Below, one piece after another: positions 6,557 through 27,120 of a DNA stretch of 64,000 nucleotides; position 1 is the stretch's first letter; each line of letters starts with the position of its first letter. The translations under genes and the position numbers were made by a program. Below the pieces are notes generated by a model. The model saw only the letters and a program-made list of their open reading frames with translations. It made no database searches and was not told the origin of the DNA. The stretch covers positions 124,001 through 188,000 of IMG/VR virus record IMGVR_UViG_3300024308_000018; one strand, written 5' to 3'.

Positions 6557-6596
6557 ACTTAACCCCCCCAAGCATTTAATTCTCAAGGAGCCTATC

Positions 6597-7115
6597 ATGG
6601 CTAAGACTACCGTTGTTGAAACCGCCCAGCTGTCCGCCCTTCAGAAAACTCTGAAGTCCCTGAAGTCCCAGCACGCCAAGGCCCAGAAGCAGCACGACAG
6701 CTCTGTCGCTGCCCAGACCAAAGCTCAGGAAATTTCCTCCCAGTCGCTGGCTGCGCAGGAACAAAGCATCGCTGAACTGGAAGCCCAGCTGCTGGCCGCC
6801 AAGTCCGGCGAAGCTGCTCCGGCACCTGCTGCCAAGAAAGCTCCGGCCAAAGCCGCAGCCGCCAAGCCTGCCGCTGGCAAGAAAGCTCCGGCCAAAGCCG
6901 AGAAGCCTGCCGCTGGCAAGAAAGCTCCGGCCAAAGCTCCGGCCAAAGCCGAGAAGCCTGCTACCAAGAAAGCCCCGGCCAAACCCGCCAAAGCTGAAAA
7001 GCCTGCTGCCAAGCCTGCTGGCAAGAAAGCTCCGGCCAAAGCTGCAAAAGCCGCTCCGGCCAAGAAAGGTAAAGGCAAGGGCAAAGGCGACGACCTCGAA
7101 TTCGATCTGGGTTAA
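6597..7115 (+). CDS. histone H1-like / AlgP-like DNA-binding protein (coiled coil plus PAKKA repeats)
   Basis: AAGGAG RBS before ATG 6597; N-terminal coiled coil; about 90 aa of K/A/P repeats; acidic tail DDLEFDLG. Confidence 0.85.
   Translation: MAKTTVVETAQLSALQKTLKSLKSQHAKAQKQHDSSVAAQTKAQEISSQSLAAQEQSIAELEAQLLAAKSGEAAPAPAAKKAPAKAAAAKPAAGKKAPAKAEKPAAGKKAPAKAPAKAEKPATKKAPAKPAKAEKPAAKPAGKKAPAKAAKAAPAKKGKGKGKGDDLEFDLG
6864..6937 (+). repeat. 35-bp exact direct repeat (39-nt period) in the H1-like gene
   Basis: AAGCCTGCCGCTGGCAAGAAAGCTCCGGCCAAAGC at 6864 and 6903; near-copy at 7011. Confidence 0.9.
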
Positions 7116-8195: not shown

Positions 8196-10228
8196 GCAAA
8201 GCGCCAGTAAAGACGCGCGTCGCCAAAGCCGTGAGCAAGGCCAGTACGCAAGAGGCCAAAGACTTTCAGATCAAGGAAGGCGTCGCGGGCATTCAGGCTA
8301 AGCCGACAATGTACCTTGGCGAACTCGGCCCGCAGATGGCTTACCGCTGCGTCAAGGAAGAAGTGGACAACGCGTTAGATGAAGCGTTGGCCGGACGTAA
8401 CAAGTGGATCGAAGTCTACTACGATTACGACGAGTCGATCACAATCGTGGCGGACAAGGCTGGTGGTATCCCAGTCGAAATGAAAACGCGTGAGAACGGT
8501 GACAAGATTTCGATCCTCACCGCTGCATTCACTATCACGCACGCGGGCGGCAAGTTCGAAGACAGCGCCTACAAAGTTTCGACAGGTACACACGGCGTCG
8601 GTGTCACTGCGGTGAACGCCGTCAGTGAATGGCTGGAAGTGTGGAGTAAGCGCAAGGGCAAAATCTATCACCAGCGCTTTGAGCTGGGCCGACCCGTGAA
8701 ACCGGATCCGGTAGTGGTCGCCAGTCTCCCGAAAAACGTTGCTGCGTTGCTGACGTCGAAGGACTACGGCACTGTGGTAATGAACAAGTTGAATCAGTCC
8801 ATCGTCAGCGAAGACGCGTCGAAGGGCAAGCTGCCGAAAAACTTCCGGCCCGCCAATCCCGAGTACAAGCAACTCGGCAACTGGCTGAAGTCGATCTCGG
8901 ATCTGAACCCCGGCCTGAACATCGTGCTCACTGCGAAGAAGGGCGCGAAGTCGAAGACCGTCAGCTTCCTGAACAAGCTGAGTCACGCGGAATTCCTCAA
9001 GCAACACGTCGCCGACATTCTGGGCGAAGAGGAAGACGCGAAGTTCAAGCCGTTCATCTTGCAGACCGACTACGTGACGGCGCTTCTGCAATGGACAACG
9101 CTGCCCAACGTGCAACTGCGTTCCTCTGCGAACAACTCGCCGACCGCGAACGGTGGTACTCACGTCCGTGGTTTGATCGACGCGCTGGTCGAGGCCGTCA
9201 AGCCTTACGAAAACAGCAAGCACTTAGACAAGAAGAAACGCAAGTACGCGTCTGAGGATCTGCTGTTCGGTCTGGTCGGCTTCTTCGACTGGCGGATGCA
9301 CGGCGCTGCATTCGACTCGCAAGTCAAAGACAAGCTGGTATCCAAAGTCCAGAACGAAGTCAAAGACGCGGTACTGCCTGAGCTGGTCAAACACTTCGCT
9401 GCCAACAAAGCGCTGCCCAAGTTCATCTTGGATCGTGCGGTGCAGGTAGAGACCGGACGTCTCGCAATGTCCAAGTCGTTGTCTGCGATGGCCGACGCCA
9501 AGCGCGCAACCAAGGGCGGGGCACTGCCGCAATGTCTGGATGCAGCAAGCACCAAGGACAACACCCTGCGCGAACTCTTCTTGGTGGAAGGGGACTCGGC
9601 GGGCGGTACTGCGAAGAACGCGCGCAACCCGGTCACGCAAGAAGTGTTCAAGGCGAGCGGTAAACCAGCCAACGCGCTGAACGCTCCGCTGGACAAAGTG
9701 ATCGGTAACCCCGTGGTCGGCAACTTCCTGATCTCGCTCGGCGTTGACTTCAAAGCATTCGATGCCCAAGTGAAAGCACGTGTGCCGAACCCGACATTCC
9801 CAGTGGACAAGCTGCGCGTCCAGCGCATCTACTTCCTCGCGGACGCGGACGTCGACGGCTATCACATCAACAGTCTGTTCCTCGCGATCATCTGGAAGCT
9901 GCTGCCTGACCTGCTCTATCAGGGCCGCGTCTATGTTGTGGACGCTCCGCTGTATAACGTCATGCACAAGAAGAAGCATTACGGTGGTGCCACCAAACAA
10001 GAACTGTTGCAGAACGCGCCATCTACTGTGAAGCCGTCTGACGTTACGCGCGCCAAAGGTTGGGGTGAAGTGTCGCCCGAGATCATGGAAGCCATCGCGT
10101 TCGACCCGTCTATCCGTCGCGTTATTCGCATTCAGCCGTTCGCCAAGCAGGAAAGTTTGGCGTGGTACAATCGAGTGCTCGGGGACGACGCCAGCGCACG
10201 CCGCCAACTGCTCGGCCTGTCCAGCTAA
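8192..10228 (+). CDS. gyrB: type IIA DNA topoisomerase subunit B (GyrB/ParE-like)
   Basis: GHKL motifs EEVDNALDE, HAGGKF, GTHGVGVTAVNA; TOPRIM motifs LVEGDSAGG, DADVDG, KGWGE. Confidence 0.95.
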   Translation: MSKAPVKTRVAKAVSKASTQEAKDFQIKEGVAGIQAKPTMYLGELGPQMAYRCVKEEVDNALDEALAGRNKWIEVYYDYDESITIVADKAGGIPVEMKTRENGDKISILTAAFTITHAGGKFEDSAYKVSTGTHGVGVTAVNAVSEWLEVWSKRKGKIYHQRFELGRPVKPDPVVVASLPKNVAALLTSKDYGTVVMNKLNQSIVSEDASKGKLPKNFRPANPEYKQLGNWLKSISDLNPGLNIVLTAKKGAKSKTVSFLNKLSHAEFLKQHVADILGEEEDAKFKPFILQTDYVTALLQWTTLPNVQLRSSANNSPTANGGTHVRGLIDALVEAVKPYENSKHLDKKKRKYASEDLLFGLVGFFDWRMHGAAFDSQVKDKLVSKVQNEVKDAVLPELVKHFAANKALPKFILDRAVQVETGRLAMSKSLSAMADAKRATKGGALPQCLDAASTKDNTLRELFLVEGDSAGGTAKNARNPVTQEVFKASGKPANALNAPLDKVIGNPVVGNFLISLGVDFKAFDAQVKARVPNPTFPVDKLRVQRIYFLADADVDGYHINSLFLAIIWKLLPDLLYQGRVYVVDAPLYNVMHKKKHYGGATKQELLQNAPSTVKPSDVTRAKGWGEVSPEIMEAIAFDPSIRRVIRIQPFAKQESLAWYNRVLGDDASARRQLLGLSS

Positions 10229-10237
10229 GGAACATGT

Positions 10238-11911
10238 ATGACAACTAAGAGAGTGGTGCGCCGACCCAAGGCCACCAAAGCTGCGAAGTCGACAGCGACC
10301 GAGATAGAATCCGGCACGCTGGTGAAAAAGCGCAAGCCTCTGCGAGCCAAGGCCACGGCAGCAACAGGCGAGCGCGAGGTCGGCACCGAAGCCCAGCTGA
10401 AGATGTCGCTGACTCCGACCGTCGACACGTACATCGAAGACAAGGAACTGCATGAATACACCGACCGCGCACTGTTCGAGTACGGTTCGTATGTCGTGCA
10501 AGACCGTGCGGTTCCCGAACTGCGCGATGGCCTGAAGCCGTCACACCGCGCGATGTTGTGGTCGGCCGTTGAACTTGGCCTGAGCCCCAGCGGTAGCTTT
10601 GCGAAGTCAGCCAAGGTTGTCGGCCATGCAATCGGTTCGTATCACCCGCACGGTGACGTCGCGTGTTATGATGCGGGTGTGTCTATCGCAAACTTCAACC
10701 CGCCTCTGCTGTGGGGCTCCGGTAACTTCGGCTCCCCAGTTGACGCACCCGCCGCGATGCGTTATTCGGAAATGAAGTTGTCACGCTTCAGCCAACTGTT
10801 CATGGCTGACAGCGGATACCTCAAGGCCGTGCCGTATCACCAGAACTTTTCTGAGGATAAGAAGTGGCCCGTCTACATGCCTGCGCTGCTGCCTATGCTG
10901 CTGCTCGCTGGCAACCCGACGATTCCGGCCTACGGTGTACGCTCCGGTAACCCCAGCTTTGAACTTGCTGGCGTTGCCCAGCTGACAATCGCGGCGTTGC
11001 GTGGTCGCAAGATCACAGCCAACGACATGATCAAGCGGCTGGTGGTGCAGCACCCCTACGGCGCTGTATGTGTTGCCGACGACGAGCAATTCGAGACCCT
11101 TATCTCGACCGGACGCGGCTCACTGCCGTTCCATCCGCAGATGATGGCCGACTACAAGCGCAAGCTGATCGTGTTGCAGAGCTACAGCCCACAAGTGTTG
11201 TCGAATGCCGTGTCCGTCGAGAAGACGATTCGTGCAATCGCCGACATGAAGGGCGTGTCGCAAGTGATGTCGTCCGGCGGCAAGAAGAACCCCGACGCGG
11301 GCACCTATGGTTGCGCCATCGCAATCACTGTTGGCCGTGGCGTTGGGGAAGACGAGTTCTACACTCTGGTGCAAGCTATCCGCAAGCGCCTGACCAAGAA
11401 CGAGTCGTACCAGCTCGGCGTCACGATACGCAAGCTGGGGGAGAAGTCGAAGTTCAGCCACTGCGACTTCCCTGCGTTCATCAACAACTGGGCCAAGTAT
11501 CGGATCTCGTTGGAGGTGGACTACCTGAACTACTTCAAGCAGCAAGCGCTCGACGCGCTCCACGTTGTGAACGGTAAACTTGTGGTTGTCGCAACCAAGG
11601 ATTCCCTTGACCGCGCTATTCACATCATCCGCACCGCGAAGGATCCGAAAGCCGCGCTGATGAAAGAGTTCAAGTTGGATGAAGTCCAAGTCGAAGCCAT
11701 CCTGAGCATGCAGCTCCGGTCGCTTGCAAAGTTGGTGCTCGACGAGCTGAAGAATATCAAAGCCAAGCTGGTCGCGGAGATCAAGGACTACGACCGTCGC
11801 CTGAAAGAACCCGGCCAGTCAGCCGCCGTGGACTTGAAGGAGCGACTGAAGAAGTACCTTGCCAAGCCAGACATGACTGTAAGCGGATTGCCTGTCTACA
11901 CGAAGGAATAA
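10238..11911 (+). CDS. gyrA: type IIA DNA topoisomerase subunit A (GyrA/ParC-like), no C-terminal pinwheel
   Basis: RAVPELRDGLKP, YHPHGD and catalytic AAMRY motifs; only 557 aa. Confidence 0.95.
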   Translation: MTTKRVVRRPKATKAAKSTATEIESGTLVKKRKPLRAKATAATGEREVGTEAQLKMSLTPTVDTYIEDKELHEYTDRALFEYGSYVVQDRAVPELRDGLKPSHRAMLWSAVELGLSPSGSFAKSAKVVGHAIGSYHPHGDVACYDAGVSIANFNPPLLWGSGNFGSPVDAPAAMRYSEMKLSRFSQLFMADSGYLKAVPYHQNFSEDKKWPVYMPALLPMLLLAGNPTIPAYGVRSGNPSFELAGVAQLTIAALRGRKITANDMIKRLVVQHPYGAVCVADDEQFETLISTGRGSLPFHPQMMADYKRKLIVLQSYSPQVLSNAVSVEKTIRAIADMKGVSQVMSSGGKKNPDAGTYGCAIAITVGRGVGEDEFYTLVQAIRKRLTKNESYQLGVTIRKLGEKSKFSHCDFPAFINNWAKYRISLEVDYLNYFKQQALDALHVVNGKLVVVATKDSLDRAIHIIRTAKDPKAALMKEFKLDEVQVEAILSMQLRSLAKLVLDELKNIKAKLVAEIKDYDRRLKEPGQSAAVDLKERLKKYLAKPDMTVSGLPVYTKE

Positions 11912-13474: not shown

Positions 13475-13999
13475 GTGTCTGATCTGAAGGCAGCCGCCAT
13501 TACGAATGGTGCTCATACGCAGTGCTATATCTGTGAGCATTACTTCGCATCGATCCACTGGCACCACACTGTGCCGAGATCGTTGGGCGGCCACGCCGAA
13601 CTTCAGATACCGCTCTGTGGCTCATGCCACACAGCACTGCACGCAAAGGCTAGTGCAGTGTTCGCTATCGTTAGAGGAACGGGCAAGAAGAAGGTAGTCG
13701 GGAGTTACTGGGCCAGAGTATCGGACGAACAAAGAGCCGAGCGATGGTTACGGGTATTAGTTGGCGCTATGCTATTCCCTCCAGTCGAGCGCGAGGATAA
13801 AACGACCGTGCTACCTGCCTTGACCGTAGACCCATATCGTCGATACGTGCTTGAAGTGATCAAGCAGGATGCGAATCTGAAAAGCATATCACAGGCTTTG
13901 CTTTTCTGTATCGACTATACCGCATCGAGTAAAGGACTTAACAATAATGAAAAAGAAAACAAAACAAGGAAATCAGGGAATAACCGTAAGCTGTGGTGA
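13475..13999 (+). CDS. HNH-fold protein
   Basis: CYIC...HWHHTVPRSLGG...IPLCGSCH motif. Confidence 0.8.
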   Translation: MSDLKAAAITNGAHTQCYICEHYFASIHWHHTVPRSLGGHAELQIPLCGSCHTALHAKASAVFAIVRGTGKKKVVGSYWARVSDEQRAERWLRVLVGAMLFPPVEREDKTTVLPALTVDPYRRYVLEVIKQDANLKSISQALLFCIDYTASSKGLNNNEKENKTRKSGNNRKLW

Positions 14000-14834
14000 C
14001 TGCGAGGGATTATCGCGGCGCGCACTGCACCCGGTTGGCGACGACGGGAAGGCTGCCAAGGTCTGCTCCCAAACGGGAACGTTGCCGGAAACCAAGCCCT
14101 GTGCTCGGTTCCGCCCTGACGTGTTTTCTTTGGATACGGACGCGCGTGTTGCTTTGCGTCAGCTGTCCAATCTCATAAAGAAGTTCGATCCACGTGACCT
14201 ACGTATTGTGGCAGCAACCCTGATGAACGAGCACAAGACTCGCAATCACGGGCTGCGCTTTGGACAGCGGATGTTCGTTCGCTATCGCTCCTACGTTGGC
14301 CGTGACTACACCAGCAACTTCATGGCTTGCACCGTGATGGATGCTGGTGATGGCGTAGTGCGCCTGATGTCCAGTGATGGGCAGACGGCACTGACCTTCG
14401 ACCTGCCAGCGTCCGGCACGTTCGATGGCCCTGTGCTGTACGATGCTCCGTCTTTCAGACCTCTACTGAAGAAGATGAAACGGGATAAGAAATTCTTCGA
14501 CCCTCAGAACGAGACCAGTCGTCGCCTTGCTCCTGAAGAGCCAGTGACGTACAAGGTACGCAAGGAAGAACTGGGGGCAGTCATTCTCGATATTGAAGAC
14601 GCGTTGCGATCCAAACCGAAGCGCAAACGTGGAGCACAGGGCGACCGCAATCTGGTTGACCTGCGTGACATGGTAGACAAGTTGGAGCGAGGTGAATTCC
14701 TCGGCCGCGTTGGTGACGAGTTCACTGACGACGATGTTCAAGTGCTTGGCGATTCCGCTTACCGTAAAGGCAAGAAAAAGAAACGCCCCGTCCGCCGCTC
14801 TAGCGGTGAACTCGAACTGTCCTCCCTTGTCTAA
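13947..14834 (+). CDS. Cys-rich (Zn-finger-like) hypothetical protein with C-terminal GELELSSLV
   Basis: CGDC..C..C N-terminus; K/R-rich tail. Confidence 0.75.
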   Translation: MKKKTKQGNQGITVSCGDCEGLSRRALHPVGDDGKAAKVCSQTGTLPETKPCARFRPDVFSLDTDARVALRQLSNLIKKFDPRDLRIVAATLMNEHKTRNHGLRFGQRMFVRYRSYVGRDYTSNFMACTVMDAGDGVVRLMSSDGQTALTFDLPASGTFDGPVLYDAPSFRPLLKKMKRDKKFFDPQNETSRRLAPEEPVTYKVRKEELGAVILDIEDALRSKPKRKRGAQGDRNLVDLRDMVDKLERGEFLGRVGDEFTDDDVQVLGDSAYRKGKKKKRPVRRSSGELELSSLV

Positions 14835-14857
14835 CTTCAATCTTGAGAGCCTACACA

Positions 14858-15973
14858 ATGCGTAACGACCTGCACACTTTGATCGCCGCCAACGAACTCG
14901 ACGTCAACTCTCCGATTTTCGAAGAGGTGATTCTCTACCTACTGCGAGCCTACGGCAACCCGATCAAGGTGTACCATCAACGTTTTGCGAAAGCCTGCTC
15001 GTTCCATAGTGAACTGACTCCGGCGCGTTTCCGTACTGAACTGCACGACACTGAATACGTTGGTGTCGCGCTGAAATTCTTTGCCGGGTACGCGGCCCTC
15101 AAGTACGGCAAGGTGACTAACCGCCACCTTGTCGCGACTGCCCCCAAGTACGGCGTCAGCAAGTGCGACGCCAAGCGCGTGATTGCGATGTTCGGCCAGC
15201 GTCAGTACCTCAATGCGGTTCGCTCCCGCTTGACTGCTGAAGGCTTCACAGCCGAAAGCCTCGACCTCAATGCGTACCGTGATGCACTGCAACTCGGACA
15301 CACTGTTATCGTTGGCCTCACCGACTCCATCGCCAAGCACGTGAACCGCAACCTGCGCTGGGTGGCGAAAGCCCACAACTGCCGGACTGCGGATCTGAAC
15401 ACTGAGATCACGGCGCAAGTGATCTCTGTCTACTACGGCATGCTGCCGACACACAAGAGTGACGACCACGTGCAGAACTATCTGTGCAGCGCCCTGCATA
15501 GCCGCATCAAGAACCTCGCCAACTACCACTCCGCTGAGAAGCGCAAGCGGCAGGTGAAGGTGACTGAGAACGGCGAAGTGCGGTACAGCCTGATTGAGGC
15601 GAGCGAATCGCACCTCAACAAGTTCAGCTCTGGCAGTGACTCCGCTGTGTCTATCGAAGAGATGGGAGGATGCGACGATTCGCTTGAGCTTCACAATTTC
15701 GAATTCACACGCTCGGTCGATTCGCTGTTCAAGATCGCGAAGTGCAAACCCAAACGCTTTGCCCTCTACAGCGTATTGCTCGGTCGGAATGTTCCGGCCT
15801 TCGCAGAGTTCCTGCGACAAAAACGACTGCTCCGCTCTGAAACCAAAACAGTGCGCGAGTGGTTGATTGATAAGCCTGTGGCATATCTGGCTGATGTCCT
15901 CGGTAAATGGCTCGGGGTCTCCCCCGCCCACGTCCAGAAGGGCATGACTGAAATGGCGATGATTCTCCTATGA
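14858..15973 (+). CDS. putative divergent phage RNA polymerase sigma factor
   Basis: Region-2-like IAKHVNRNLRWVAK..ADLNTEI..NYLCSALHSRIKNLANYHSAEKRK; C-terminal HTH-like VLGKWLGVSPAHVQK. Confidence 0.55.
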   Translation: MRNDLHTLIAANELDVNSPIFEEVILYLLRAYGNPIKVYHQRFAKACSFHSELTPARFRTELHDTEYVGVALKFFAGYAALKYGKVTNRHLVATAPKYGVSKCDAKRVIAMFGQRQYLNAVRSRLTAEGFTAESLDLNAYRDALQLGHTVIVGLTDSIAKHVNRNLRWVAKAHNCRTADLNTEITAQVISVYYGMLPTHKSDDHVQNYLCSALHSRIKNLANYHSAEKRKRQVKVTENGEVRYSLIEASESHLNKFSSGSDSAVSIEEMGGCDDSLELHNFEFTRSVDSLFKIAKCKPKRFALYSVLLGRNVPAFAEFLRQKRLLRSETKTVREWLIDKPVAYLADVLGKWLGVSPAHVQKGMTEMAMILL

Positions 15974-16311
15974 TGAATGAAGCAATTATTTTCTCGTTCT
16001 TTCGTAACGCTCAGACGCCTGACTATCGGCGTCTCGTAATCGCAACTGCGATTGCCGAACTGTCCACCTTGCAAGACCCTGTTAGCATGGGCAAGTTGTT
16101 GAACCGTCTTCAGAAGCAACATGCGTTTACGCCTGACGCCTGTGAGGACGCCATTGCCGCATTACGATCCGTAGCTGGGTTCAATGCGCTGACCGTGTGG
16201 AACGCGAGCAAAACCCAACTGATGCGCCTGAAGGCCAGCCCCAAGCTCGATGCTTGGATGCAAGCCAACAGCGTGATCGTTGATGGGGTACGTCAAACGC
16301 TCGCAGCTTAG
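15970..16311 (+). CDS. hypothetical protein (possible winged helix)
   Basis: ATGA overlap with the upstream gene. Confidence 0.65.
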   Translation: MMNEAIIFSFFRNAQTPDYRRLVIATAIAELSTLQDPVSMGKLLNRLQKQHAFTPDACEDAIAALRSVAGFNALTVWNASKTQLMRLKASPKLDAWMQANSVIVDGVRQTLAA

Positions 16312-16319
16312 GTGGATCG

Positions 16320-17801
16320 ATGGAGCTACACTCACTAAACCTTGAGCTGCGCGCGCTGCGCAGCTTAACCGATGTCAAAGTCGACAAGCACTACCGCTTG
16401 TCTCTGCTCGGGCGACTCAATGCCAAACACTTCGGTGTGGATCCGACACGCAATGCCTTTGTGCGTTTGCAGCGTCTGGCCCGAGAAGACGGCGAGCTGC
16501 CTGACTGGGAAGCACTGTGTGAAGACCCCAGACTGAACGAAGAGGCGCGCGAGTTACTGCGTGACGAGGACGGCGTTAAGCCCGTACTGAAGAAGCACTA
16601 CGACAAGTTCGCTAGGGCTATGGGCAAGTACAGCAAACGTCGCGCACTGCTCGCCATCTCTCGGATGATCAACGATGGGCTGAAGGAAAAGGAGAGTGAA
16701 GATTTTGACGAGGAAGATCTACACGCCCGCATAATCGAAGGCATGCAGAACATCGGTCGCGACGCAATCGCCGAAGCCAAGATCTACGGCTTTGGTGCTG
16801 GGCAACGCGGCTCTGGCCTGAAGCTGGCGAAGCAGGTGCTAGATGCTCCGAAAGAAAAGCTGTACCTGACGGGACTGACGGAATACGATCAGCGCAACTT
16901 CGGCCTGCCTACTACAGGCGTCGTGCTGCTGGCGGCCACAACCTCTGGCGGTAAGTCTGCCGTGTCCATGAACATCGGGCACGACATGGCTATGCTCAAC
17001 GGGATTGCCGTCAGCCGGATCACGTTGGAGATGACGGCAGAGCAAGAGACCAAGCGCTATATGTCGGCAATGTCCGGCGTCGAGTTCAACAAGATCAAGA
17101 ACGCGACCCTGACCCGTGCCGAGAAGCGCCGTATCTACAACGCCATGGAGAAGATTGACCGCGACTTGGAGAAAGCTGGCGGTGCGTTCAAGTACACCTC
17201 GCCCCCTCGCGGGATGACTATGGACGACGTGCTGTATATGACGGCAGCCAACAACGACCAAGTTACCATCATCGACTACATCGGCCTGCTCGAAGACATC
17301 GACACCAACAACCAAGCCGCAACCCTCAGTGAGGCTGTGCGTAAAGCCAAGATTCACGCCACTCAAAACCAGCGCCTCTACATCATCCTTGTTCAGCTCG
17401 ATAGTGAGAGCGGTAAAGTCCGTTACTCACGTGGTATGAACGAGCATGCGGACGTGCTGATTACGTGGAGCTACGTGGATGCGGAAGTGCGCGCCACCCA
17501 CGAACTGCCAATGGAAGTTGAGAAAGCGCGTGACGGCGAACTGTTTGGGTTCCTCGTTGCCGAAGACTTTGCGACCATGAGTGCGGGTGCCCGTGCAGCC
17601 AAGGCCCAAGCCAGTCGGGGCGACACGAACCGCGACGACATGCGGCGAGAGCGACCTGAAGCCAAAGACGACGATGCGCCTACCCCCAAGAAGAAAAAGC
17701 GCCCCGCCGGATCTGGTGACCGTGAACGCTTCAGCCGGAAACCCAAAGACAAGCCGAAGGCCCGTGGCTTTGGTGAATTGGAGTTGAGTTCAGTTGTTTA
17801 A
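16320..17801 (+). CDS. dnaB: DnaB-like replicative helicase
   Basis: Walker A AATTSGGKS; ITLEM; IIDYIGLL; ILVQL; EKARDG. Confidence 0.9.
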   Translation: MELHSLNLELRALRSLTDVKVDKHYRLSLLGRLNAKHFGVDPTRNAFVRLQRLAREDGELPDWEALCEDPRLNEEARELLRDEDGVKPVLKKHYDKFARAMGKYSKRRALLAISRMINDGLKEKESEDFDEEDLHARIIEGMQNIGRDAIAEAKIYGFGAGQRGSGLKLAKQVLDAPKEKLYLTGLTEYDQRNFGLPTTGVVLLAATTSGGKSAVSMNIGHDMAMLNGIAVSRITLEMTAEQETKRYMSAMSGVEFNKIKNATLTRAEKRRIYNAMEKIDRDLEKAGGAFKYTSPPRGMTMDDVLYMTAANNDQVTIIDYIGLLEDIDTNNQAATLSEAVRKAKIHATQNQRLYIILVQLDSESGKVRYSRGMNEHADVLITWSYVDAEVRATHELPMEVEKARDGELFGFLVAEDFATMSAGARAAKAQASRGDTNRDDMRRERPEAKDDDAPTPKKKKRPAGSGDRERFSRKPKDKPKARGFGELELSSVV

Positions 17802-18495
17802 GAAACGCATTGCAGAGTCGTGGCCTTCGGGTCACGACTTTCACGTTGACAGGGAATACATGCTCGACTTCTGGCCGCTCGATATTGACGTGGAAGAAGC
17901 CAGTGACCCGCCGCCCGTCAAACATGACCCAGCTCCATATGCTCCACGCAAACCCAACAACGAGATCGACCTGTCGGAAGATGTCGAGTGGTTGGAGCGA
18001 GAGGCCGGATCCACGATCATGGTGACGCGCGAAACCGAGGACGTGCCCGAGAACTTTATCTCCTACACCGAGGTAGAGGAAGAGGAAGCACGCAAGCGGA
18101 TGGACGGGCTCACCTCAGAATTTAGAACCTTGCTCATGGAGCACGGCGGCCACAGCGTGTTAGCTGCTGACCGCGCCGCTTCAGAGTTCGAGGCAATCCT
18201 ACTTGACGTGTTTGGTATAGAGGCAACTGTAGACCGCAACGTCGAAGAAATGTCGTCCCTTGTGCTCGACATGGAGACCCTTGGACTCTTGCTATCCAAA
18301 ACAAAATTCATACCTAGCTCCGTAAAGAGAGCGACAATGCTACGCGCTATCGAGGACGGCTTCGAAACACTGAAGCAGAAGCGCGTATCGAAACAACGAA
18401 AGTTAGTGGCTTCCCTTATGAAAGCGAACGCGAACCTAGTAGCAGGCGCTGAGAACCCGGCCTCGCGAATGGCAGTGATCGGCAAACACACGTAA
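17794..18495 (+). CDS. hypothetical protein upstream of terminase (start uncertain)
   Basis: ORF fills the gap between helicase and terL; small-terminase position only, with no motif support. Confidence 0.65.
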   Translation: MFKKRIAESWPSGHDFHVDREYMLDFWPLDIDVEEASDPPPVKHDPAPYAPRKPNNEIDLSEDVEWLEREAGSTIMVTRETEDVPENFISYTEVEEEEARKRMDGLTSEFRTLLMEHGGHSVLAADRAASEFEAILLDVFGIEATVDRNVEEMSSLVLDMETLGLLLSKTKFIPSSVKRATMLRAIEDGFETLKQKRVSKQRKLVASLMKANANLVAGAENPASRMAVIGKHT

Positions 18496-18504
18496 GGGCA
18501 ATTC

Positions 18505-21500
18505 ATGACACGATCCAAGAAGCCGGATCTGACCGCGCGCCGCCGTTTGGTAGCGCGCCGTTCAGCCGCGACAGATTTCCTGATAGGTCTGGGTGGCGCT
18601 GACGCCGCCACAGACGATGCTGATATGGGCGTAGACATTGGTGATGCGCAAGGCGTCCCCAGTGAGATCGGCACTGCAAAGTCCATCGACATTCGCCAGA
18701 TTATCAAGCAAGCTCAGAAGACTCGTGTCCCCCGCGACTTGAAGTTCGACGACTCTTCTATGCCCGACGCTGCCAACTTCTACCGCTGGTGCACGGGCTC
18801 CGAATTCCTCAACGCCGAGCCATACCTTGAGCAGGTGCTGATCGGTGTACGTCTCTTTGGTGAATACTGCCCCATTTGCAGTGACACCGAGTGGATGAAG
18901 ATTGAAAACCATGAGCCGCAGGAAGGCTTGGCCGGAATGTTGGCTAAGGTGGTGCTGCTCGAACATGGCGTGTGCCCCAAGTGTAAGGGTCGCCGCTCTG
19001 AGTTCTTCCGCACCAACAAGCTCAAGTTCTACAACGAACTCGGGGTGAACGCCGGACAACGTTGTGTGACTGGTGACCAGCTGCTGTCTACTGGTGTCGG
19101 CCTGCGCCGCGTGCGTGACCTGCTGCCAGATGCAGAGTATGGCGAGAACGAAGTTGAAGGTCTGACCGCTGCCCTGACCGAGGGCCCTCTCAAGGTCAAC
19201 AAGATCGTGCGCATTGAAGCAGGTGAACGTCTGGTGTGTGCAACACTAGCCAACGGCACCGAGATCAAAGGCACCGCTACTCACGGCATCGAAGGCTGGG
19301 CCAAGAGCTACCGCCCGCTGCAAGACGCCGCCAAGTCTCCCGTGGTTATCGCCACCAATCACCACATCGGTGAGCCATTCCCAATTCGCGAGTACGCCGA
19401 AGGCATGGTGCGCCAAGGGGCCCTCCCCGAGAACTACAGCGCCAAGGCCATCCGCAACTACGCGATGATGCAGACAATGGCCCACGCCGTTATGGGTACG
19501 CTGCTCGTCCACAACAACGTTCCCTATGTCGAGGGCGGGCCAACACTTGACACCGTGTTCAAGTCGCTGACCGCTGGCTGCTACCGTGACAACAAGATGG
19601 TGCAGCTGCCCGACTACCTGTTGTCGAACGCTGCTCCCCTACTGCACACATTCTTCCGCACCCTCTTCCCTGACGACGAGATCGGCTTGTCCGTGATGGT
19701 CGACTCAGAGGAACTGGCGCGAGAGATTCAGGCCCTTGCCATTGCGTGCGGTTGGCCCTGCATGCGTGACGGTCACAGCCTTTGGCTCGACCAGTTGGCC
19801 TACAACGACTTCAGCGAGCTGCGCGAAACCGTGCTGCGCGTAGAACCCACTTTTTCAGCCGAGCGCTGGGATCGTGGGTCTCTTGCGTCTGCACTCGAAA
19901 ACATTGAGATCGACAGCCCCTTGTACTACCTCAAGCGGCTGGTCGACGGCGATTACGCGGTGTTCAATGCTGCGGTGGCCGACATCGAGCCCGAGGACAC
20001 TTGGACGTTCGAAGTCCCGAGCGGCCAGCGCTACATGATCGACAACATCGTGTGCGAAAACAGCGGCAAGTCCGTGGTGGTAGCAATGCTGTCCACGTAC
20101 ATGACGCACCGCGTGCTCAAGATGCAGAAGCCGACGCGCGTCTACGGTATCGGCGACAACCAGATCCTGCAAGGCACGTTCGTGGCCCTGACTCAGGCTC
20201 AGGCAAAGGACACGTTGTGGGAGCCGTACTTCGGCTACATCGTGGCGAGCCCTTGGTTCCAACGTTACCATGCGTTGATCAAGCGCTACGAATCCCTGTA
20301 CGGTGTCGAGGTGATGAAGATTCGGGACACGTTCGTTCTGTATCGCCATCGCAACCTCATTGTGTTCCCAGCGGGCCCCGACAAGCGTACCCTTCGTGGT
20401 CGAACTCGTATCTTCTACGCGATAGATGAAATCGGTTGGTTCGACAACGATGCGTCCAAGAACAAGATCAAGACAGGCGCTGCCGAAGTCTCGATTGCGT
20501 TGGAACGTTCGTGCCTGACTGTGCGGTCGGCGGAGGGACGGCTGGTCGCCAGTGGCAATGACATGTGCTACACGGCATATGGCTTCAACGTCAGTAGCCC
20601 GTCAGACTTCCGCGACAAGATCTGTGAGATTGTCCGGCAGGCTGAGACCAGTAACAAGATATTGGGTATTCATGCCCCGACGTGGAAGATGAACCCGAAC
20701 GTTACGCGGGAGATGCTGGAAGAAGAATTCCGCAAGAACCCGATAGCGGCGGCCCGAGATTATGGCGCGCAGCCGCCAGTGTCAGCGAACCCATTCATCT
20801 CGCCCGGTACGGTGGACGAGTGTATGCGTGACGTTGGCCGTAACGAGGTGGTCTACAACCAAGCTACCGACCGACGCAGTAATGGGATCTCGGTTGAGCG
20901 GACGGCCTACGGCAAGATCACCAAGATCAAGCAAGTCGACCGCCCCAGTGTGCTGGCGATGGATGCTGGGGAAACCAATAACAGTTTCGCGCTGTCCTGT
21001 ATGTCGCTGGTAAATGGTATCCCCAGCGTTGACCTGCTCGTTGAGATCATGCCGAGCCCCGGCGAACCGCTCAACTACACGTTGATCTTTGACCACATCA
21101 TTGTACCGATGATCAAGGCACGCAACGTTAAGGTGCTGCTCGCCGACCGTTGGAACTCCACGAAACTCCTGCAAGATGCGCTGGCCCTTGGGCTCGTACA
21201 GATTGCCAAGAAGTATTCGCTGAAGTACAACGACATGTGGGACGTCAAGAACCAGATGCAAGGCGGCACGTTCTCTTATCCACGTTCGCAGTTTGTGAAA
21301 TCCGTAATCGAGCTGCTGCACGATCAGGACTTGACCAACTACCCGGCATGCTTCGCCAACAAACCTGTCGAGCACTTCATGTACCAGTGCGTCACGATCC
21401 AAGATAGCCGCAATCAGGTTCTCAAGGGCGTGGGGCTCACCGATGACTTGTGGCGAGCAACAGCGTTGGCGGCCTACGGACTCAACAGTCCGGACTACGC

Positions 21501-21663
21501 ACCGTTTCTTGTAAATAGCCCTAACAGGCACATCGACCGGAACCCACAACGTCTCGGCGTTATTGGCAGTGCCAAAGCCGTCGGTACGGGCAGCGGTGCT
21601 CAGGCGCGCAGCGGAACGATTGGTAATTTCACAGCGGTACTCAGTTCAAGGAGAGCAAAATGA
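18505..21663 (+). CDS. terL: terminase large subunit, intein-containing
   Basis: Walker A reconstituted as AGQR|SGKS; Walker B YAIDEIGW; nuclease LAMDAG and DDLW; adjacent to portal. Confidence 0.9.
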   Translation: MTRSKKPDLTARRRLVARRSAATDFLIGLGGADAATDDADMGVDIGDAQGVPSEIGTAKSIDIRQIIKQAQKTRVPRDLKFDDSSMPDAANFYRWCTGSEFLNAEPYLEQVLIGVRLFGEYCPICSDTEWMKIENHEPQEGLAGMLAKVVLLEHGVCPKCKGRRSEFFRTNKLKFYNELGVNAGQRCVTGDQLLSTGVGLRRVRDLLPDAEYGENEVEGLTAALTEGPLKVNKIVRIEAGERLVCATLANGTEIKGTATHGIEGWAKSYRPLQDAAKSPVVIATNHHIGEPFPIREYAEGMVRQGALPENYSAKAIRNYAMMQTMAHAVMGTLLVHNNVPYVEGGPTLDTVFKSLTAGCYRDNKMVQLPDYLLSNAAPLLHTFFRTLFPDDEIGLSVMVDSEELAREIQALAIACGWPCMRDGHSLWLDQLAYNDFSELRETVLRVEPTFSAERWDRGSLASALENIEIDSPLYYLKRLVDGDYAVFNAAVADIEPEDTWTFEVPSGQRYMIDNIVCENSGKSVVVAMLSTYMTHRVLKMQKPTRVYGIGDNQILQGTFVALTQAQAKDTLWEPYFGYIVASPWFQRYHALIKRYESLYGVEVMKIRDTFVLYRHRNLIVFPAGPDKRTLRGRTRIFYAIDEIGWFDNDASKNKIKTGAAEVSIALERSCLTVRSAEGRLVASGNDMCYTAYGFNVSSPSDFRDKICEIVRQAETSNKILGIHAPTWKMNPNVTREMLEEEFRKNPIAAARDYGAQPPVSANPFISPGTVDECMRDVGRNEVVYNQATDRRSNGISVERTAYGKITKIKQVDRPSVLAMDAGETNNSFALSCMSLVNGIPSVDLLVEIMPSPGEPLNYTLIFDHIIVPMIKARNVKVLLADRWNSTKLLQDALALGLVQIAKKYSLKYNDMWDVKNQMQGGTFSYPRSQFVKSVIELLHDQDLTNYPACFANKPVEHFMYQCVTIQDSRNQVLKGVGLTDDLWRATALAAYGLNSPDYAPFLVNSPNRHIDRNPQRLGVIGSAKAVGTGSGAQARSGTIGNFTAVLSSRRAK
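19063..20061 (+). mobile_element. 333-aa intein with degenerate LAGLIDADG-like region
   Basis: Starts CVTGDQLL; block B GTATH; ends IVCEN followed by extein Ser; removal restores GQRSGKS. Confidence 0.9.
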
Positions 21664-25714: not shown

Positions 25715-26155
25715 ATGAAATTCTTGACCTGTAAGTTGTCGAAGCACCGTGGTGTTTACGACATGGTGTTCTGCGACGCGGGTTCGGAGAAAGATTGCTT
25801 GCGGTTGCTTGCACCCGACGGCGTGATTGTGATCTTCGATCACGTACCGGATGGGGCGTGGGTCTATAAGTCGAATCTCTATCTCCGGCTCTATAAGCTC
25901 ATGAACCCAATGTTCGATGTTCCGACCTCAGTGGTGTCAATGCTTAGCCCAAAGATGCTGCCGAAGTTTGATCATCCATTAGTCTACGATGGACAGTCGT
26001 GCCTCTACCAGTTGCACTGGATGCACGAATTCGAATGCCTGCGCACTCTCGTAGTCGGGTCGCGGGTGAATATGATGGCCGACGCGTTGCGCGCACAGGA
26101 AGGCGCAGCATGGTACGGCGATTATTCTGTCCACTTCATACGGGATGCTTCATGA
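25715..26155 (+). CDS. hypothetical protein
   Basis: GAGG RBS; ATGA overlap with the exonuclease gene. Confidence 0.7.
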   Translation: MKFLTCKLSKHRGVYDMVFCDAGSEKDCLRLLAPDGVIVIFDHVPDGAWVYKSNLYLRLYKLMNPMFDVPTSVVSMLSPKMLPKFDHPLVYDGQSCLYQLHWMHEFECLRTLVVGSRVNMMADALRAQEGAAWYGDYSVHFIRDAS

Positions 26156-27120
26156 AAAATGTAGTCTACCACATCCACGCCATTGACCTGAGCAACTGGC
26201 TGCACCGCGCTTACCACGTAGTGCGTCCGGAAGACATGATGGTCAACGGTAAACCAACTGGGGCCGTGAAGGTTTTCATCAACATGGTGGAATCCCTGCT
26301 CGGCAAAATCCGCGATACGAAAAAGAAGGGAGAGAAGCACCACCTCGTATTCGCCGTCGACTGCTCACGCGTTAAGAGCTGGCGCTACCTGATGGTCAAG
26401 CCGTGGGCTGAAGAGCGTGCCCGTGACCTCGGGGTGCCGCCGACGGAGCTTTACTACAAGGGCAAGCGCACCACGGATCAGGAGAAGCGTGATGCTCTCC
26501 GCTTCCAAACCAAACTGCTGTTGGAGATGCTTGAGACGTCCGGCTTTCCGTGCATCGGTGATAGCGACGCGGAAGCTGACGACATACTCGGCACCATTGC
26601 CCGCAACTTCAGCAAGAGACCTAACGTTGTCGTGCACCTCCACACACGCGACAAGGATGCGGCCCAGCTGCTGATATTCCCCAACACCGAAATCGTACAC
26701 CCTGCAATCGGTCAGTCCCCTGAGCGCATACTCCGCAGCTCGCAAGATTGCATTGACGTGTACGGTGTTCCGCCCGAGCGTATCGTTGATTACCTCGCCA
26801 TGTGTGGCGATGCTGTCGACAACGTTCCCGGCATTCCCGGCGTTGGTGATAAGACCGCAATCAAACTGCTTTCCAAGTACGGCTCGTTCTCGCAGGTTGT
26901 CGAGAATCCGGAAGCTGTGAAATCGGTGAAGGCATTGCGTGAAGGCAACCTGCCAATGAGCCCAGACATGCTGGTCGATCTGATCAAGCTGGACTGTCGC
27001 ATCAAGTCGGTGCCGAAGAAAGCAAGCGCGTTCGCACGTGCGAAACTCACGGAAGAGCGGATCGCAGCAATGACTAAGCTGCGCCGTAAATACAAATTCA
27101 ACTCACTGTTCGGGGCATAA
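26152..27120 (+). CDS. 5'-3' exonuclease / flap endonuclease (Pol I N-terminal domain / T4 RNase H family)
   Basis: IDLSNWLHRAYH, YYKGKR, EADDILG, TRDKD, GDAVDNVPGIPGVGDKTA. Confidence 0.95.
   Translation: MKNVVYHIHAIDLSNWLHRAYHVVRPEDMMVNGKPTGAVKVFINMVESLLGKIRDTKKKGEKHHLVFAVDCSRVKSWRYLMVKPWAEERARDLGVPPTELYYKGKRTTDQEKRDALRFQTKLLLEMLETSGFPCIGDSDAEADDILGTIARNFSKRPNVVVHLHTRDKDAAQLLIFPNTEIVHPAIGQSPERILRSSQDCIDVYGVPPERIVDYLAMCGDAVDNVPGIPGVGDKTAIKLLSKYGSFSQVVENPEAVKSVKALREGNLPMSPDMLVDLIKLDCRIKSVPKKASAFARAKLTEERIAAMTKLRRKYKFNSLFGA

What the first reader, a model, noticed from the sequence alone, without database searches (positions are those of the whole stretch)
14805..17801. Two unrelated proteins end in the same peptide, GELELSS(L/V)V: a shared C-terminal docking motif
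Seen: the Zn-finger protein (14805-14834) ends ..KKKKRPVRRSS-GELELSSLV and the DnaB helicase (17772-17801) ends ..KPKDKPKARGF-GELELSSVV, both after disordered K/R-rich linkers. The codons differ at most synonymous positions (CTC GAA CTG TCC TCC vs TTG GAG TTG AGT TCA), so the similarity appears to be maintained at protein level. The H1-like protein ends similarly (KGKGKG-DDLEFDLG). Knowledge: T4 gp43, gp55 and gp33 share a C-terminal sliding-clamp-binding peptide that couples late transcription to replication. Inference: both proteins dock on a common hub (clamp, SSB, primase, protease or compartment scaffold). Since they flank the sigma-like gene, this could be an undescribed replication-transcription coupling system.
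Basis: partly seen in the sequence, partly recalled or inferred. Interest (0 to 1): 0.76.

Follow-up and report, generated by a model that had tools for sequence, protein, structure and literature searches.

The report
Shared C-terminal docking peptide, jumbo phage
In a 230-kb jumbo phage, the replicative helicase and an unrelated zinc-ribbon protein (plus, in looser form, a histone-H1-like protein) end in the same short peptide, which related phages also keep; it is very likely a docking tag for one shared partner, perhaps the phage's own sliding clamp, but that partner has not been identified.

Summary
The Zn-ribbon protein (13947-14834) ends GELELSSLV and the DnaB-like helicase (16320-17801) ends GELELSSVV. 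That is 8 of 9 residues; the next best of 28,920 protein pairs in this genome has 6, and 300 shuffles never exceeded 6. Six of the eight shared residues use different codons.

Orthologues of both proteins keep a core of hydrophobic-Glu-hydrophobic-[G/S]-[S/D]-hydrophobic behind variable Lys/Arg-rich linkers. The H1-like protein keeps a related tail with hydrophobic residues at alternate positions, out to Erwinia phage Y3.

The window lies in a complete PaBG/Y3-like jumbo phage. I found its own, highly diverged beta sliding clamp (DnaN fold, Foldseek E 2e-20), a clamp loader and a family A polymerase.

My best reading is a short linear docking motif for a common phage-encoded partner. The clamp is the leading candidate, because the spacing resembles the hexapeptide clamp-binding motif QLxLxL. 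This is not shown: the one complex prediction gave no answer, and the flap endonuclease and a repair helicase carry different, more canonical clamp-type tails.

The motif is ancient in the Zn-ribbon family and appears only in one sub-lineage of helicases, so the helicase probably converged on it.

Replication-transcription coupling remains speculation. The sigma-like protein has no such tail, although the Zn-ribbon/sigma-like gene pair is always adjacent.

The parts
13947..14834 (+). Zn-ribbon / SH3-like-barrel protein (295 aa). Function unknown; labelled 'DNA topoisomerase' in PHROGs and RefSeq without support.
   Evidence: ORF. No Pfam hit. phrog_17701 E 3e-48. 183 representative homologues. 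Four near-invariant Cys: C16, C19, C40, C52. AlphaFold2 pLDDT 81. Only weak Tudor/MBT/SH3-like barrel matches, Z under 5. Related folds in PaBG and BcepSauron.
14706..14804 (+). Lys/Arg-rich disordered linker of the Zn-ribbon protein (about residues 254-286).
   Evidence: pLDDT under 50-65. These alignment columns are gap-rich and variable in length.
14805..14831 (+). C-terminal motif GELELSSLV.
   Evidence: The Glu of the hydrophobic-E-hydrophobic core is at least 90% conserved in 14 orthologues. Orthologue tails: GELE[LI]GSLV, GIELSSMID, TSIE[LI], GEIELGSINY.., REIEI[TA][SN]I, and Y3 GIVELGDLDD.
14843..15973 (+). Sigma-like protein (376 aa). It always lies directly downstream of the Zn-ribbon gene and has no docking tail.
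   Evidence: No Pfam hit. phrog_19229, unknown function. ESM Atlas feature hits of 0.95 to viral clusters with Sigma70_r2/r4, which is a lead only. Adjacent in 10/10 loci. C-terminus ...MTEMAMILL is conserved as M..[MI]A..LL and looks like the end of a helix.
15970..16311 (+). Small conserved protein (113 aa) between the sigma-like gene and the helicase; overlaps the upstream stop codon.
   Evidence: phrog_27753 E 3e-5. Conserved position.
16320..17801 (+). DnaB-like replicative helicase (493 aa).
   Evidence: PF03796 DnaB_C E 1.6e-18. 44-46% identity to helicases of Y3/JA29-like phages. 36 homologues.
17580..17771 (+). Charged, low-complexity linker of the helicase (residues 421-484).
   Evidence: Not aligned by tblastn to relatives, whose alignments end at residue 420. 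Composition. Not modelled.
17772..17798 (+). C-terminal motif GELELSSVV, preceded by a conserved RGF.
   Evidence: Relatives: GFGE[LM]ELS[ST][VI]V, GFKEIEIGSSIL, GFGS[FY]E[ILV]G.GSIVT, SSFE.E[VI]GSYV. Absent in L021 (GGGFGGKKERTIV), in Y3-like phages (KRKSYAVS) and in L012 (DDDDSIPFVVD).
6594..7115 (+). H1-like protein: N-terminal coiled coil, A/K/P repeats, C-terminal tail.
   Evidence: No Pfam or PHROG hit. Orthologues in Y3 (gp324), L004, L006/L019, L011, L020 and L021.
7089..7112 (+). Related tail DDLEFDLG (hydrophobic residues at alternate positions).
   Evidence: Orthologues: KEIKFDL[ND], GALDFKL, DDLQLS[ML], SLDDVAL, and Y3 EDFDFDME.
25999..27120 (+). 5'-3' exonuclease (flap endonuclease), used as a comparator. 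It carries a different, canonical clamp-type tail, FNSLFGA (27097-27117).
   Evidence: PF02739 E 7e-22 and PF01367 E 3e-19. Tail KYKFNSLFGA here, KYQFNSLFGA in L020, KKQLGLKKLLHV in Y3.

Best explanation
The C-terminal peptides are a short linear docking motif. The core is hydrophobic-Glu-hydrophobic-[Gly/Ser]-[Ser/Asp]-hydrophobic, held on a flexible Lys/Arg-rich linker.

The motif is ancient in the Zn-ribbon protein family. It has been acquired convergently by the DnaB-like helicase in this sub-lineage, and it occurs in a looser form (hydrophobic residues at alternate positions) in the H1-like DNA-binding protein. All three proteins would therefore be tethered to, or compete for, the same groove on one phage-encoded partner.

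The most likely partner is the phage's own, highly diverged beta sliding clamp at G000:C1:34101-35291(-). A phage gamma-like clamp loader at C1:64093-65289(-) would load it. The motif would lie in the clamp's hydrophobic cleft in the manner of hexapeptide clamp-binding motifs (QLxLxL).

Shown: the motif, its conservation, and the existence of the clamp and loader. Inferred: the docking function. Inferred on weak grounds: that the clamp is the partner.
For: - The motif is far beyond chance and is not a DNA repeat.
- Orthologues of both proteins keep the core while the linkers vary freely in length and sequence.
- Across 150 representatives of the Zn-ribbon family, the hydrophobic-[ED]-hydrophobic-[GSTN] pattern occurs in the last 14 residues in 24%, against 2.8% of 495 background phage proteins (odds ratio 10.8, p 2e-14). 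Median K/R count in the linker is 7 against 3.
- Partial co-variation within genomes: ELEL/ELEL here and in L010, EIEI/EIEI in L011, ELSS/ELST in L019.
- Several orthologues carry extra residues after the motif (..GSINYSNKD..GDLDD..GTMIQEDDQ). This fits a groove-binding peptide and does not fit a signal that needs a free carboxyl end.
- Clamp: the 397-aa ORF two genes downstream of the polymerase gives an AlphaFold2 model with pLDDT 86.9. Its top 50 PDB matches are all DnaN clamps, E 2e-20, TM about 0.7.
- Clamp loader: PF13177 E 9e-37.
- The PaBG paper reports a phage beta clamp and gamma subunit as hallmarks of this phage group (PMC7412058).
- The H1-like tails (D-L-E-F-D-L, A-L-D-F-K-L, D-L-Q-L-S-M, E-I-K-F-D-L, F-D-F-D-M) have the 2-4-6 hydrophobic spacing of QLxLxL. 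L-[ED]-L matches the L-[SD]-L of QL[SD]LF (consensus as quoted in PMC12867686).
- Y3's flap endonuclease tail Q-L-G-L-K-K-L-L has the same spacing as L-E-L-S-S-[LV]-V.
Against: - No binding evidence. The one complex prediction (clamp dimer, flap endonuclease tail, helicase tail) scored 0.02 and the tool says it counts neither for nor against.
- The motif lacks the leading Gln and the terminal Phe/Leu pair of canonical clamp-binding motifs.
- In the same genome, the classical clamp clients carry a different and more conserved tail type. The flap endonuclease has FNSLFGA, identical in a relative whose helicase is only about 53% identical (L020). The UvsW-like helicase has NSILSRSF, versus SNLG[LM]RRF or [KR][SN]LFG in relatives. 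The ELEL-type tails may therefore address another site or another protein.
- Replicative helicases are not known clamp clients (own knowledge).
- In Y3-like and L012-like phages the helicase tail differs from the Zn-ribbon tail.
Confidence: 0.4

Rival explanations
1. The tails dock on a different replisome component rather than the clamp. Candidates are the family A polymerase (as in T7, where the helicase-primase and the ssDNA-binding protein both use C-terminal tails to hold the polymerase), the short DnaG-type primase that lacks a helicase-binding domain, the gp32-like ssDNA-binding protein, or the clamp loader.
For: - The phage has a 1045-aa family A polymerase.
- Its primase is only 347 aa, with a Zn ribbon and Toprim only.
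- It has a gp32-like SSB candidate with four KSRFDDDEDE repeats.
- In the helicase, a conserved Arg/Ser-Gly-Phe precedes the motif and resembles those SSB repeats.
- The canonical clamp-type tails of the flap endonuclease and the UvsW-like helicase form a separate class.
- In the L012 lineage the helicase ends DDDDSIPFVVD, like the bacterial SSB tip.
Against: The linkers here are basic and the tip is aliphatic, unlike the acidic, Phe-terminated T7 tails and the SSB tip (own knowledge). Nothing points to one specific partner, and no interaction was tested.
Confidence: 0.3
2. The motif belongs to the Zn-ribbon/sigma-like module. The Zn-ribbon protein acts with the adjacent sigma-like factor on host RNA polymerase, and its tail ties that complex to a DNA-tracking partner. 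Alternatively its SH3/Tudor-like barrel captures such tails, including the helicase's. Either way the helicase's mimicry would create competition or a hand-over between replication and late transcription or packaging.
For: - The Zn-ribbon and sigma-like genes are adjacent in 10/10 loci, down to 26-33% identity, within a conserved, overlapping gene string that runs on to the helicase and the large terminase.
- The motif is ancient in the Zn-ribbon family but lineage-specific in the helicase.
- The central barrel resembles peptide- or RNAP-binding Tudor/SH3 domains only weakly, Z 3.5-4.9.
- Precedents exist for clamp-coupled late transcription in T4 and Mu (PMC12867686).
Against: - The sigma-like assignment rests on language-model similarity only, with no Pfam hit.
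- The sigma-like protein has no tail.
- The AlphaFold2 monomer model does not dock the tail onto the protein's own barrel, where pLDDT is under 50.
- The structural matches are in the range expected by chance (note).
Confidence: 0.12
3. The tail is a cargo-targeting peptide of the encapsulin type. It would bind the inner face of the HK97-fold capsid shell, or another phage compartment, so that DNA-binding proteins are packaged and co-injected.
For: Close relatives read S-G-E-L-E-I-G-S-L-V (P0038). This matches 6 of 10 positions of the encapsulin consensus targeting peptide D-G-S-L-G-I-G-S-L-K-G, including the widely conserved GSL (PMC7925596). The helicase and Zn-ribbon genes sit next to the terminase and portal genes.
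Against: - No virion proteomics places these proteins in particles. Only 14 abundant PaBG virion proteins were identified, and Y3 annotates none of the three as structural.
- Packaging a hexameric replicative helicase has no precedent (own knowledge).
- The basic residue that follows GSL in encapsulin peptides is absent.
- Y3-like helicases lack the motif.
- Hydrophobic-x-hydrophobic-G-S-hydrophobic is a generic groove-binding pattern.
Confidence: 0.05
4. The tail is a C-terminal degradation tag or PDZ-type ligand ([ST]-x-V-COOH) that times the removal of these proteins.
For: SSLV and SSVV fit the class I PDZ pattern S-x-V-COOH. Many helicase relatives end S-[YIV]-V.
Against: Many orthologues extend past the motif or end in acidic residues (..GSINYSNKD..SSMID..GDLDD..SIVT), so a free carboxyl end after the motif is not conserved. 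No PDZ protein or dedicated protease was identified.
Confidence: 0.04

Closest known systems
T4 sliding-clamp (gp45) binding peptides at the C-termini of gp43 polymerase, gp33 and gp55
   Same: Unrelated phage proteins share a short hydrophobic/acidic C-terminal peptide on a flexible tail. The phage encodes its own clamp and loader. A sigma-like factor sits in the same gene neighbourhood. (T4 summary in PMC12867686; peptide details from own knowledge.)
   Different: The clamp here is a DnaN-type dimer fold, not gp45. The carriers are a helicase, a Zn-ribbon protein and an H1-like protein. The polymerase and the sigma-like protein do not carry the motif. Binding is untested.
Bacterial beta-clamp-binding motif QL[SD]LF / QLxLxL, including phage Mu MuC/Mor (QPDLF, Qx[DE][LM]F)
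   Same: Leu-[acidic]-Leu core, hydrophobic residues at alternate positions, location in disordered termini, and use by phage regulators (PMC12867686).
   Different: No leading Gln and no terminal Phe. There is an extra residue before the third hydrophobic position in the Zn-ribbon and helicase tails. The same genome has better matches to this motif on the flap endonuclease and the UvsW-like helicase.
T7 gp4 helicase-primase and gp2.5 SSB C-terminal tails docking on gp5 polymerase (own knowledge)
   Same: A replicative helicase and a second DNA-binding protein end in similar tails, in a phage with a family A polymerase.
   Different: T7 tails are acidic and end in Phe. Here the linkers are basic and the tip is aliphatic with one conserved Glu.
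Encapsulin cargo-targeting peptides (consensus DGSLGIGSLKG; PMC7925596)
   Same: C-terminal hydrophobic-x-hydrophobic-G-S-L on a flexible linker. Relatives read GELEIGSLV.
   Different: There is no shell-adjacent cargo operon, no trailing basic residue and no evidence of encapsidation.
Bacterial SSB C-terminal tip (DDDIPF; own knowledge)
   Same: A hub-binding peptide at the end of a disordered tail. One related lineage's helicase ends DDDDSIPFVVD.
   Different: The motif studied here has no Pro-Phe and follows a basic rather than an acidic tail.

Membership tests
Beta-clamp-binding motif (QL[SD]LF / QLxLxL) | Gln at position 1 | tested here: not met
   Position 1 is Glu, Gly, Asp or Ser in all tails.
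Beta-clamp-binding motif (QL[SD]LF / QLxLxL) | Hydrophobic residues at positions 2, 4 and 5 or 6 | tested here: inconclusive
   The H1-like tails fit 2-4-6 (L-E-F-D-L, L-D-F-K-L, L-Q-L-S-M). The Zn-ribbon and helicase tails fit 2 and 4, but the third hydrophobic residue is at position 7 (L-E-L-S-S-V).
Beta-clamp-binding motif (QL[SD]LF / QLxLxL) | A beta clamp is available in the system | tested here: met
   Phage-encoded DnaN-fold protein and clamp loader.
Beta-clamp-binding motif (QL[SD]LF / QLxLxL) | Physical binding in the cleft between clamp domains II and III | tested here: inconclusive
   Complex prediction gave 'no answer', score 0.02, with peptides outside the calibration range.
T7-type acidic C-terminal tails (gp4, gp2.5) | Acidic tail ending in an aromatic residue | tested here: not met
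   The linkers are Lys/Arg-rich and the termini are Val or Leu.
SSB C-terminal tip | Asp-rich run followed by [IL]-P-F at the extreme C-terminus | tested here: not met
   Absent in this genome's three tails. Present only in the L012-lineage helicase.
Encapsulin targeting peptide | Hydrophobic-x-hydrophobic-G-S-L followed by a basic residue near the C-terminus | tested here: inconclusive
   L-E-I-G-S-L-V in P0038 matches the hydrophobic and GSL positions. This genome has S-S instead of G-S, and no basic residue follows.
Encapsulin targeting peptide | The cargo is found inside the HK97-fold shell | not testable with these tools
   No virion proteome with enough depth was found.
PDZ ligand / C-terminal degron | The motif must be at the free carboxyl terminus | tested here: not met
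   Orthologues carry 2-9 extra residues after the motif.
DnaB-family replicative helicase (the carrier protein) | RecA-type DnaB C-terminal domain | tested here: met
   PF03796 E 1.6e-18, residues 184-364.
DNA topoisomerase (database label of the Zn-ribbon protein) | Toprim, GyrA or topoisomerase catalytic domains | tested here: not met
   No Pfam hit. The fold searches find no topoisomerase. The true topoisomerase II subunits are at 8192-10228 and 10238-11911.

The most novel reading that the evidence does not exclude
The tail is an encapsulin-like cargo-loading peptide. This jumbo-phage lineage would use the same hydrophobic-x-hydrophobic-G-S-hydrophobic C-terminal signal as encapsulins to load an H1-like DNA-coating protein, a Zn-ribbon factor and even its helicase into the HK97-fold capsid, for co-injection with the genome.

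A less exotic but still new alternative, at about 0.12, is a T4-like clamp-coupled late-transcription system in which the Zn-ribbon protein plays the gp33 role beside the sigma-like factor.
Probability: 0.05. Interest if true: 0.85.

Novelty: new variant of a known kind. Interest (0 to 1): 0.55.

Why it matters
Shared C-terminal peptides are how the T4 and T7 replisomes, bacterial SSB and sliding clamps organise many clients around one hub. Finding such a peptide in the barely studied PaBG/Y3-like jumbo phages gives a direct experimental handle, because a 9-residue bait can be used to find the organising hub of their replication, transcription and packaging gene cluster.

It also assigns a first testable property to a widespread Zn-ribbon protein family that databases mislabel as topoisomerase. 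The helicase's apparent convergence on another protein's docking motif suggests competition or hand-over at one site.

The work also exposes a phage beta clamp that standard profile models miss.

Tried and rejected
- **Complex prediction.** Complex prediction with the clamp dimer, the flap endonuclease tail and the helicase tail returned 'no answer' (score 0.02, controls not run, peptides under 30 aa outside calibration). I do not use it as evidence.
- **Clamp by profile models.** PF00712 and TIGR00663 found no clamp in the genome, and Pfam, PHROGs and PDB sequence searches of the 397-aa ORF were empty. Only the fold search identified it.
- **Canonical SSB.** PF00436 found none.
- **Topoisomerase II tail.** I considered the large subunit's C-terminus RRQLLGLSS as a third clamp-type tail and rejected it, because it lies inside the GyrB C-terminal domain PF00986.
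- **Polymerase tail.** I considered the 'IKISS' stretch in Y3-like polymerases as the same motif and rejected it. Across 25 relatives it is part of a conserved amphipathic basic segment, KKIKISKSMLKSALKGIAKK, which is probably a helix and is absent in this genome.
- **KKKKRP hexapeptide.** It occurs in both linkers here but is not conserved in relatives, so I treat it as composition, not motif.
- **DNA duplication or gene conversion.** Rejected on codon usage and the lack of upstream nucleotide similarity.
- **PDZ ligand or degron.** Rejected because orthologues extend past the motif.
- **Fold of the Zn-ribbon protein.** Searches in PDB, BFVD, VIA-wide, AFDB clusters and the ESM Atlas gave only uncharacterised phage relatives and weak SH3/Tudor-like barrel matches.
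- **Locus searches that failed.** The search for related loci with the broad Zn-ribbon alignment failed. The narrow alignment found only 2 loci, and the single polymerase protein found none.
- **Virion proteomics.** I found no data deep enough to test the capsid idea.
- **Nucleotide search.** megablast of the region against the phage collection found nothing.

Full report
**What is in the sequence**

The window is bases 124,001-188,000 of a single 229,746-bp contig. The genome resource classes it as a complete virus record; GC content is 56.6%.

- ORF 13947-14834(+) encodes a 295-aa protein with an N-terminal four-Cys zinc ribbon. It ends ...KKKKRPVRRSSGELELSSLV.
- ORF 16320-17801(+) encodes a 493-aa DnaB-type helicase (PF03796, E 1.6e-18). 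It ends ...KPKDKPKARGFGELELSSVV.
- The H1-like ORF has its real start at the ATG at 6594 and runs to 7115. It has a coiled-coil head and A/K/P repeats, and ends ...KGKGKGDDLEFDLG.

**Is it more than chance?**

Yes.

- Of 28,920 pairs among 241 likely proteins of the whole genome, this pair shares 8 of the last 9 residues. The next best pair shares 6, and 300 composition-preserving shuffles never exceeded 6.
- Only these two ORFs and the H1-like ORF, out of 4,236 stop-to-stop ORFs, carry [GDE][ED]L[ED][LFIVM] in the last 14 residues.
- Six of the eight identical residues use different codons. The 90 nt upstream are only 43% identical. The likeness is therefore held at the protein level and is not a DNA repeat or a recent conversion.
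- The tail of the Zn-ribbon protein is predicted disordered, with pLDDT under 50. The helicase linker is a charged, low-complexity stretch that does not align to relatives.

**Which phage this is**

Protein searches place the genome with Erwinia phage Y3, Dickeya phages JA13/JA29/AD1, a Yersinia phage and Pseudomonas phages. This is the 'Lupandier' group of the PaBG paper. Identity is 44-52% for the helicase and the polymerase (PMC7412058).

The gene order p474-(HNH)-Zn-ribbon-sigma-like-p113-DnaB-p233-large terminase is kept in all 10 loci that reach far enough. This includes relatives with only 26-33% identity.

**Conservation of the tails**

Zn-ribbon orthologues end as follows:
- GELE[LI]GSLV
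- GIELSSMID
- TSIE[LI]
- GEIELGSINYSNKD
- STIELGTMIQEDDQ
- REIEI[TA][SN]I
- GIVELGDLDD (in Y3)

In a 14-sequence alignment the Glu is at least 90% conserved, while the linker columns are mostly gaps.

Among 150 representatives of the family (183 hits at 50% clustering), almost all have a basic linker followed by a short stretch of alternating hydrophobic residues. I see three flavours..IELGDL..I.I.W and ..F.VRG. The hydrophobic-[ED]-hydrophobic-[GSTN] pattern occurs in the last 14 residues in 24% of them, against 2.8% of 495 background phage proteins (p 2e-14). Relatedness inflates this p-value.

The helicase keeps the motif only in relatives at 52% identity or more: GFGE[LM]ELS[ST][VI]V, GFKEIEIGSSIL, GFGS[FY]E[ILV]G.GSIVT, SSFE.E[VI]GSYV. 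One member of that group (L021) has GGGFGGKKERTIV. Y3-like helicases end KKKKRK-SYAVS or similar, and the L012 lineage ends DDDDSIPFVVD.

The H1-like tail is kept as KEIKFDL[ND], GALDFKL, DDLQLS[ML], SLDDVAL and, in Y3, EDFDFDME.

Within genomes there is partial co-variation:
- ELEL/ELEL here and in L010
- EIEI/EIEI in L011
- ELSSMI/ELSTIV in L019

I conclude three things. The motif is ancient in the Zn-ribbon family. The helicase of this sub-lineage has converged on it. The H1-like protein carries a related, looser version.

**Looking for the hub**

Profile models found no clamp (PF00712, TIGR00663) and no OB-fold SSB. They did find a 1045-aa family A polymerase with an N-terminal extension and a gamma-like clamp loader (PF13177, E 9e-37).

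The PaBG paper describes a diverged beta subunit two genes from the polymerase. Following that, I modelled the 397-aa ORF at C1:34101-35291(-). The model has pLDDT 86.9 and pTM 0.83. The top 50 PDB matches listed are DnaN sliding clamps, at E 2e-20, TM about 0.7 and 10-15% identity. The phage therefore encodes its own beta clamp.

Other possible partners are:
- a 347-aa DnaG-type primase with only a Zn ribbon and Toprim;
- a gp32-like SSB candidate with four KSRFDDDEDE repeats;
- a RecA/UvsX-like protein.

**The single direct test**

I ran the clamp dimer with the flap endonuclease tail and the helicase tail through complex prediction. It scored 0.02, and the tool states this is no evidence either way because peptides under 30 residues are outside its calibration. 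No further structure or complex jobs were available.

**Indirect arguments for the clamp**

- The H1-like tails have the 2-4-6 hydrophobic spacing of hexapeptide clamp-binding motifs.
- L-[ED]-L mirrors the L-[SD]-L of QL[SD]LF (consensus quoted in PMC12867686).
- Y3's flap endonuclease ends Q-L-G-L-K-K-L-L, the same spacing as L-E-L-S-S-[LV]-V.
- The motif tolerates residues after it, as groove-binding peptides do.

**Indirect arguments against the clamp**

- The leading Gln and the terminal aromatic residue are missing.
- The two classical clamp clients in this genome carry a different, tighter tail class. The flap endonuclease has KY[KQ]FNSLFGA, unchanged in a relative whose helicase is about 53% identical (L020). 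The UvsW-like repair helicase has NSILSRSF here, SNLG[LM]RRF in Y3-like phages and [KR][SN]LFG in JA-like phages.
- Two tail classes suggest two sites, or two partners.

I therefore rate 'shared docking motif' at about 0.8, and 'the partner is the clamp' at roughly 0.35-0.4.

**What the Zn-ribbon protein is**

It is not a topoisomerase, despite the PHROG and RefSeq label. It has no Pfam domain, and the real topoisomerase II subunits lie upstream.

The model shows a zinc ribbon, a helical segment and an SH3/Tudor/MBT-like barrel. All PDB matches have Z under 5, and the only clear relatives are uncharacterised phage proteins, including ones in PaBG and BcepSauron.

Its invariable adjacency to the sigma-like gene suggests a role with that protein. 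The sigma-like assignment itself rests on ESM Atlas features near Sigma70_r2/r4 clusters, with no Pfam hit.

**The coupling idea**

T4 (gp33/gp55/gp45) and now Mu (MuC) tie late transcription to the clamp (PMC12867686). A similar arrangement here is conceivable. But the sigma-like protein lacks the tail, and nothing links the Zn-ribbon protein to RNA polymerase beyond gene order and a weak fold resemblance. I keep this as a minority reading.

**A further resemblance**

Close relatives read SGELEIGSLV. This matches 6 of 10 positions of the encapsulin consensus targeting peptide DGSLGIGSLKG, whose GSL is widely conserved (PMC7925596), and encapsulin shells share the HK97 fold with phage capsids.

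I could find no virion proteomics that would place these proteins in particles, and the pattern is a generic groove-binding one. I list this as the most novel reading that is not excluded, at about 5%.

**Verdict**

This is a real, conserved and apparently undescribed short linear motif in a poorly studied jumbo-phage clade. It is analogous to the tail-mediated hubs of the T4 and T7 replisomes and of bacterial clamps and SSB. Its partner is unresolved. It is a new variant of a known kind, moderately interesting and readily testable.

Noticed in passing
outside the window: G000:C1:34101-35291 (-) (= L008:6102-7292): Phage-encoded beta sliding clamp, so diverged that PF00712, TIGR00663, PHROGs and PDB sequence searches all miss it. 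It is recognised only by fold (Foldseek E 2e-20 to DnaN clamps).
   Followed up: yes
outside the window: G000:C1:82128-83396 (+) (= L050:7128-8396): gp32-like ssDNA-binding protein candidate (Cys/His cluster, no Pfam hit). Its C-terminal third holds four tandem modules, K-S-K-K-S-R-F-D-D-D-E-D-E..., which look like a multiplied SSB-tip-like motif.
   Followed up: partly
window 25999-27120 and outside the window G000:C1:31466-33106 (-): The flap endonuclease (..KYKFNSLFGA) and the UvsW-like repair helicase (..QANSILSRSF) carry a second class of conserved C-terminal tails that is closer to canonical clamp-binding motifs. Y3 has ..KQLGLKKLLHV and ..SNLGLRRF.
   Followed up: partly
window 5691-6488 and outside the window G000:C1:122094-123533: Extremely acidic proteins with HeH/SAP-like 'MDEDELRALV' motifs sit beside the H1-like basic protein. 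The acidic/basic gene pair is conserved in Y3 (gp323/gp324) and in L004, L006, L011 and L021. The second protein ends ..GEFDLE, like the H1-like ..LEFDLG.
   Followed up: no
window 13475-13999: An HNH endonuclease ORF overlaps the start of the Zn-ribbon gene. It is present in L005, L006/L019, L010, L011 and L021 but absent in L004 and L020, so it is probably a mobile insertion.
   Followed up: partly
window 18505-21663: The large terminase is 1052 aa. Relatives range from 943 to 1520 aa, and several carry intein / LAGLIDADG domains (L004, L012, L019). This copy has no Pfam hit at all.
   Followed up: no
outside the window: G000:C1:75723-76766 (-) (= L050:723-1766): The DnaG-type primase is only 347 aa (Zn ribbon plus Toprim). 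It seems to lack the C-terminal helicase-binding domain, so how the primase couples to the helicase is open.
   Followed up: no
L012:2793-4286 (metagenomic relative): In a distant lineage with the same gene order, the DnaB helicase ends DDDDSIPFVVD, close to the bacterial SSB tip DDDIPF. The neighbouring Zn-ribbon protein ends EEITINWG.
   Followed up: no
L022-L047 (polymerase loci of Y3/AD1-like phages): The family A polymerases of Y3-like phages end in a conserved amphipathic basic segment, KKIKISKSMLKSALKGIAKK. This genome's polymerase ends EPKKKRRLKRKAA instead.
   Followed up: no
window 14831-18505: The genes from the Zn-ribbon gene to the terminase are tightly packed. Start and stop codons overlap at 15970/15973 and 17794/17801, and the other gaps are under 10 nt. 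This suggests one translationally coupled operon joining a sigma-like factor, the helicase and the packaging genes.
   Followed up: no
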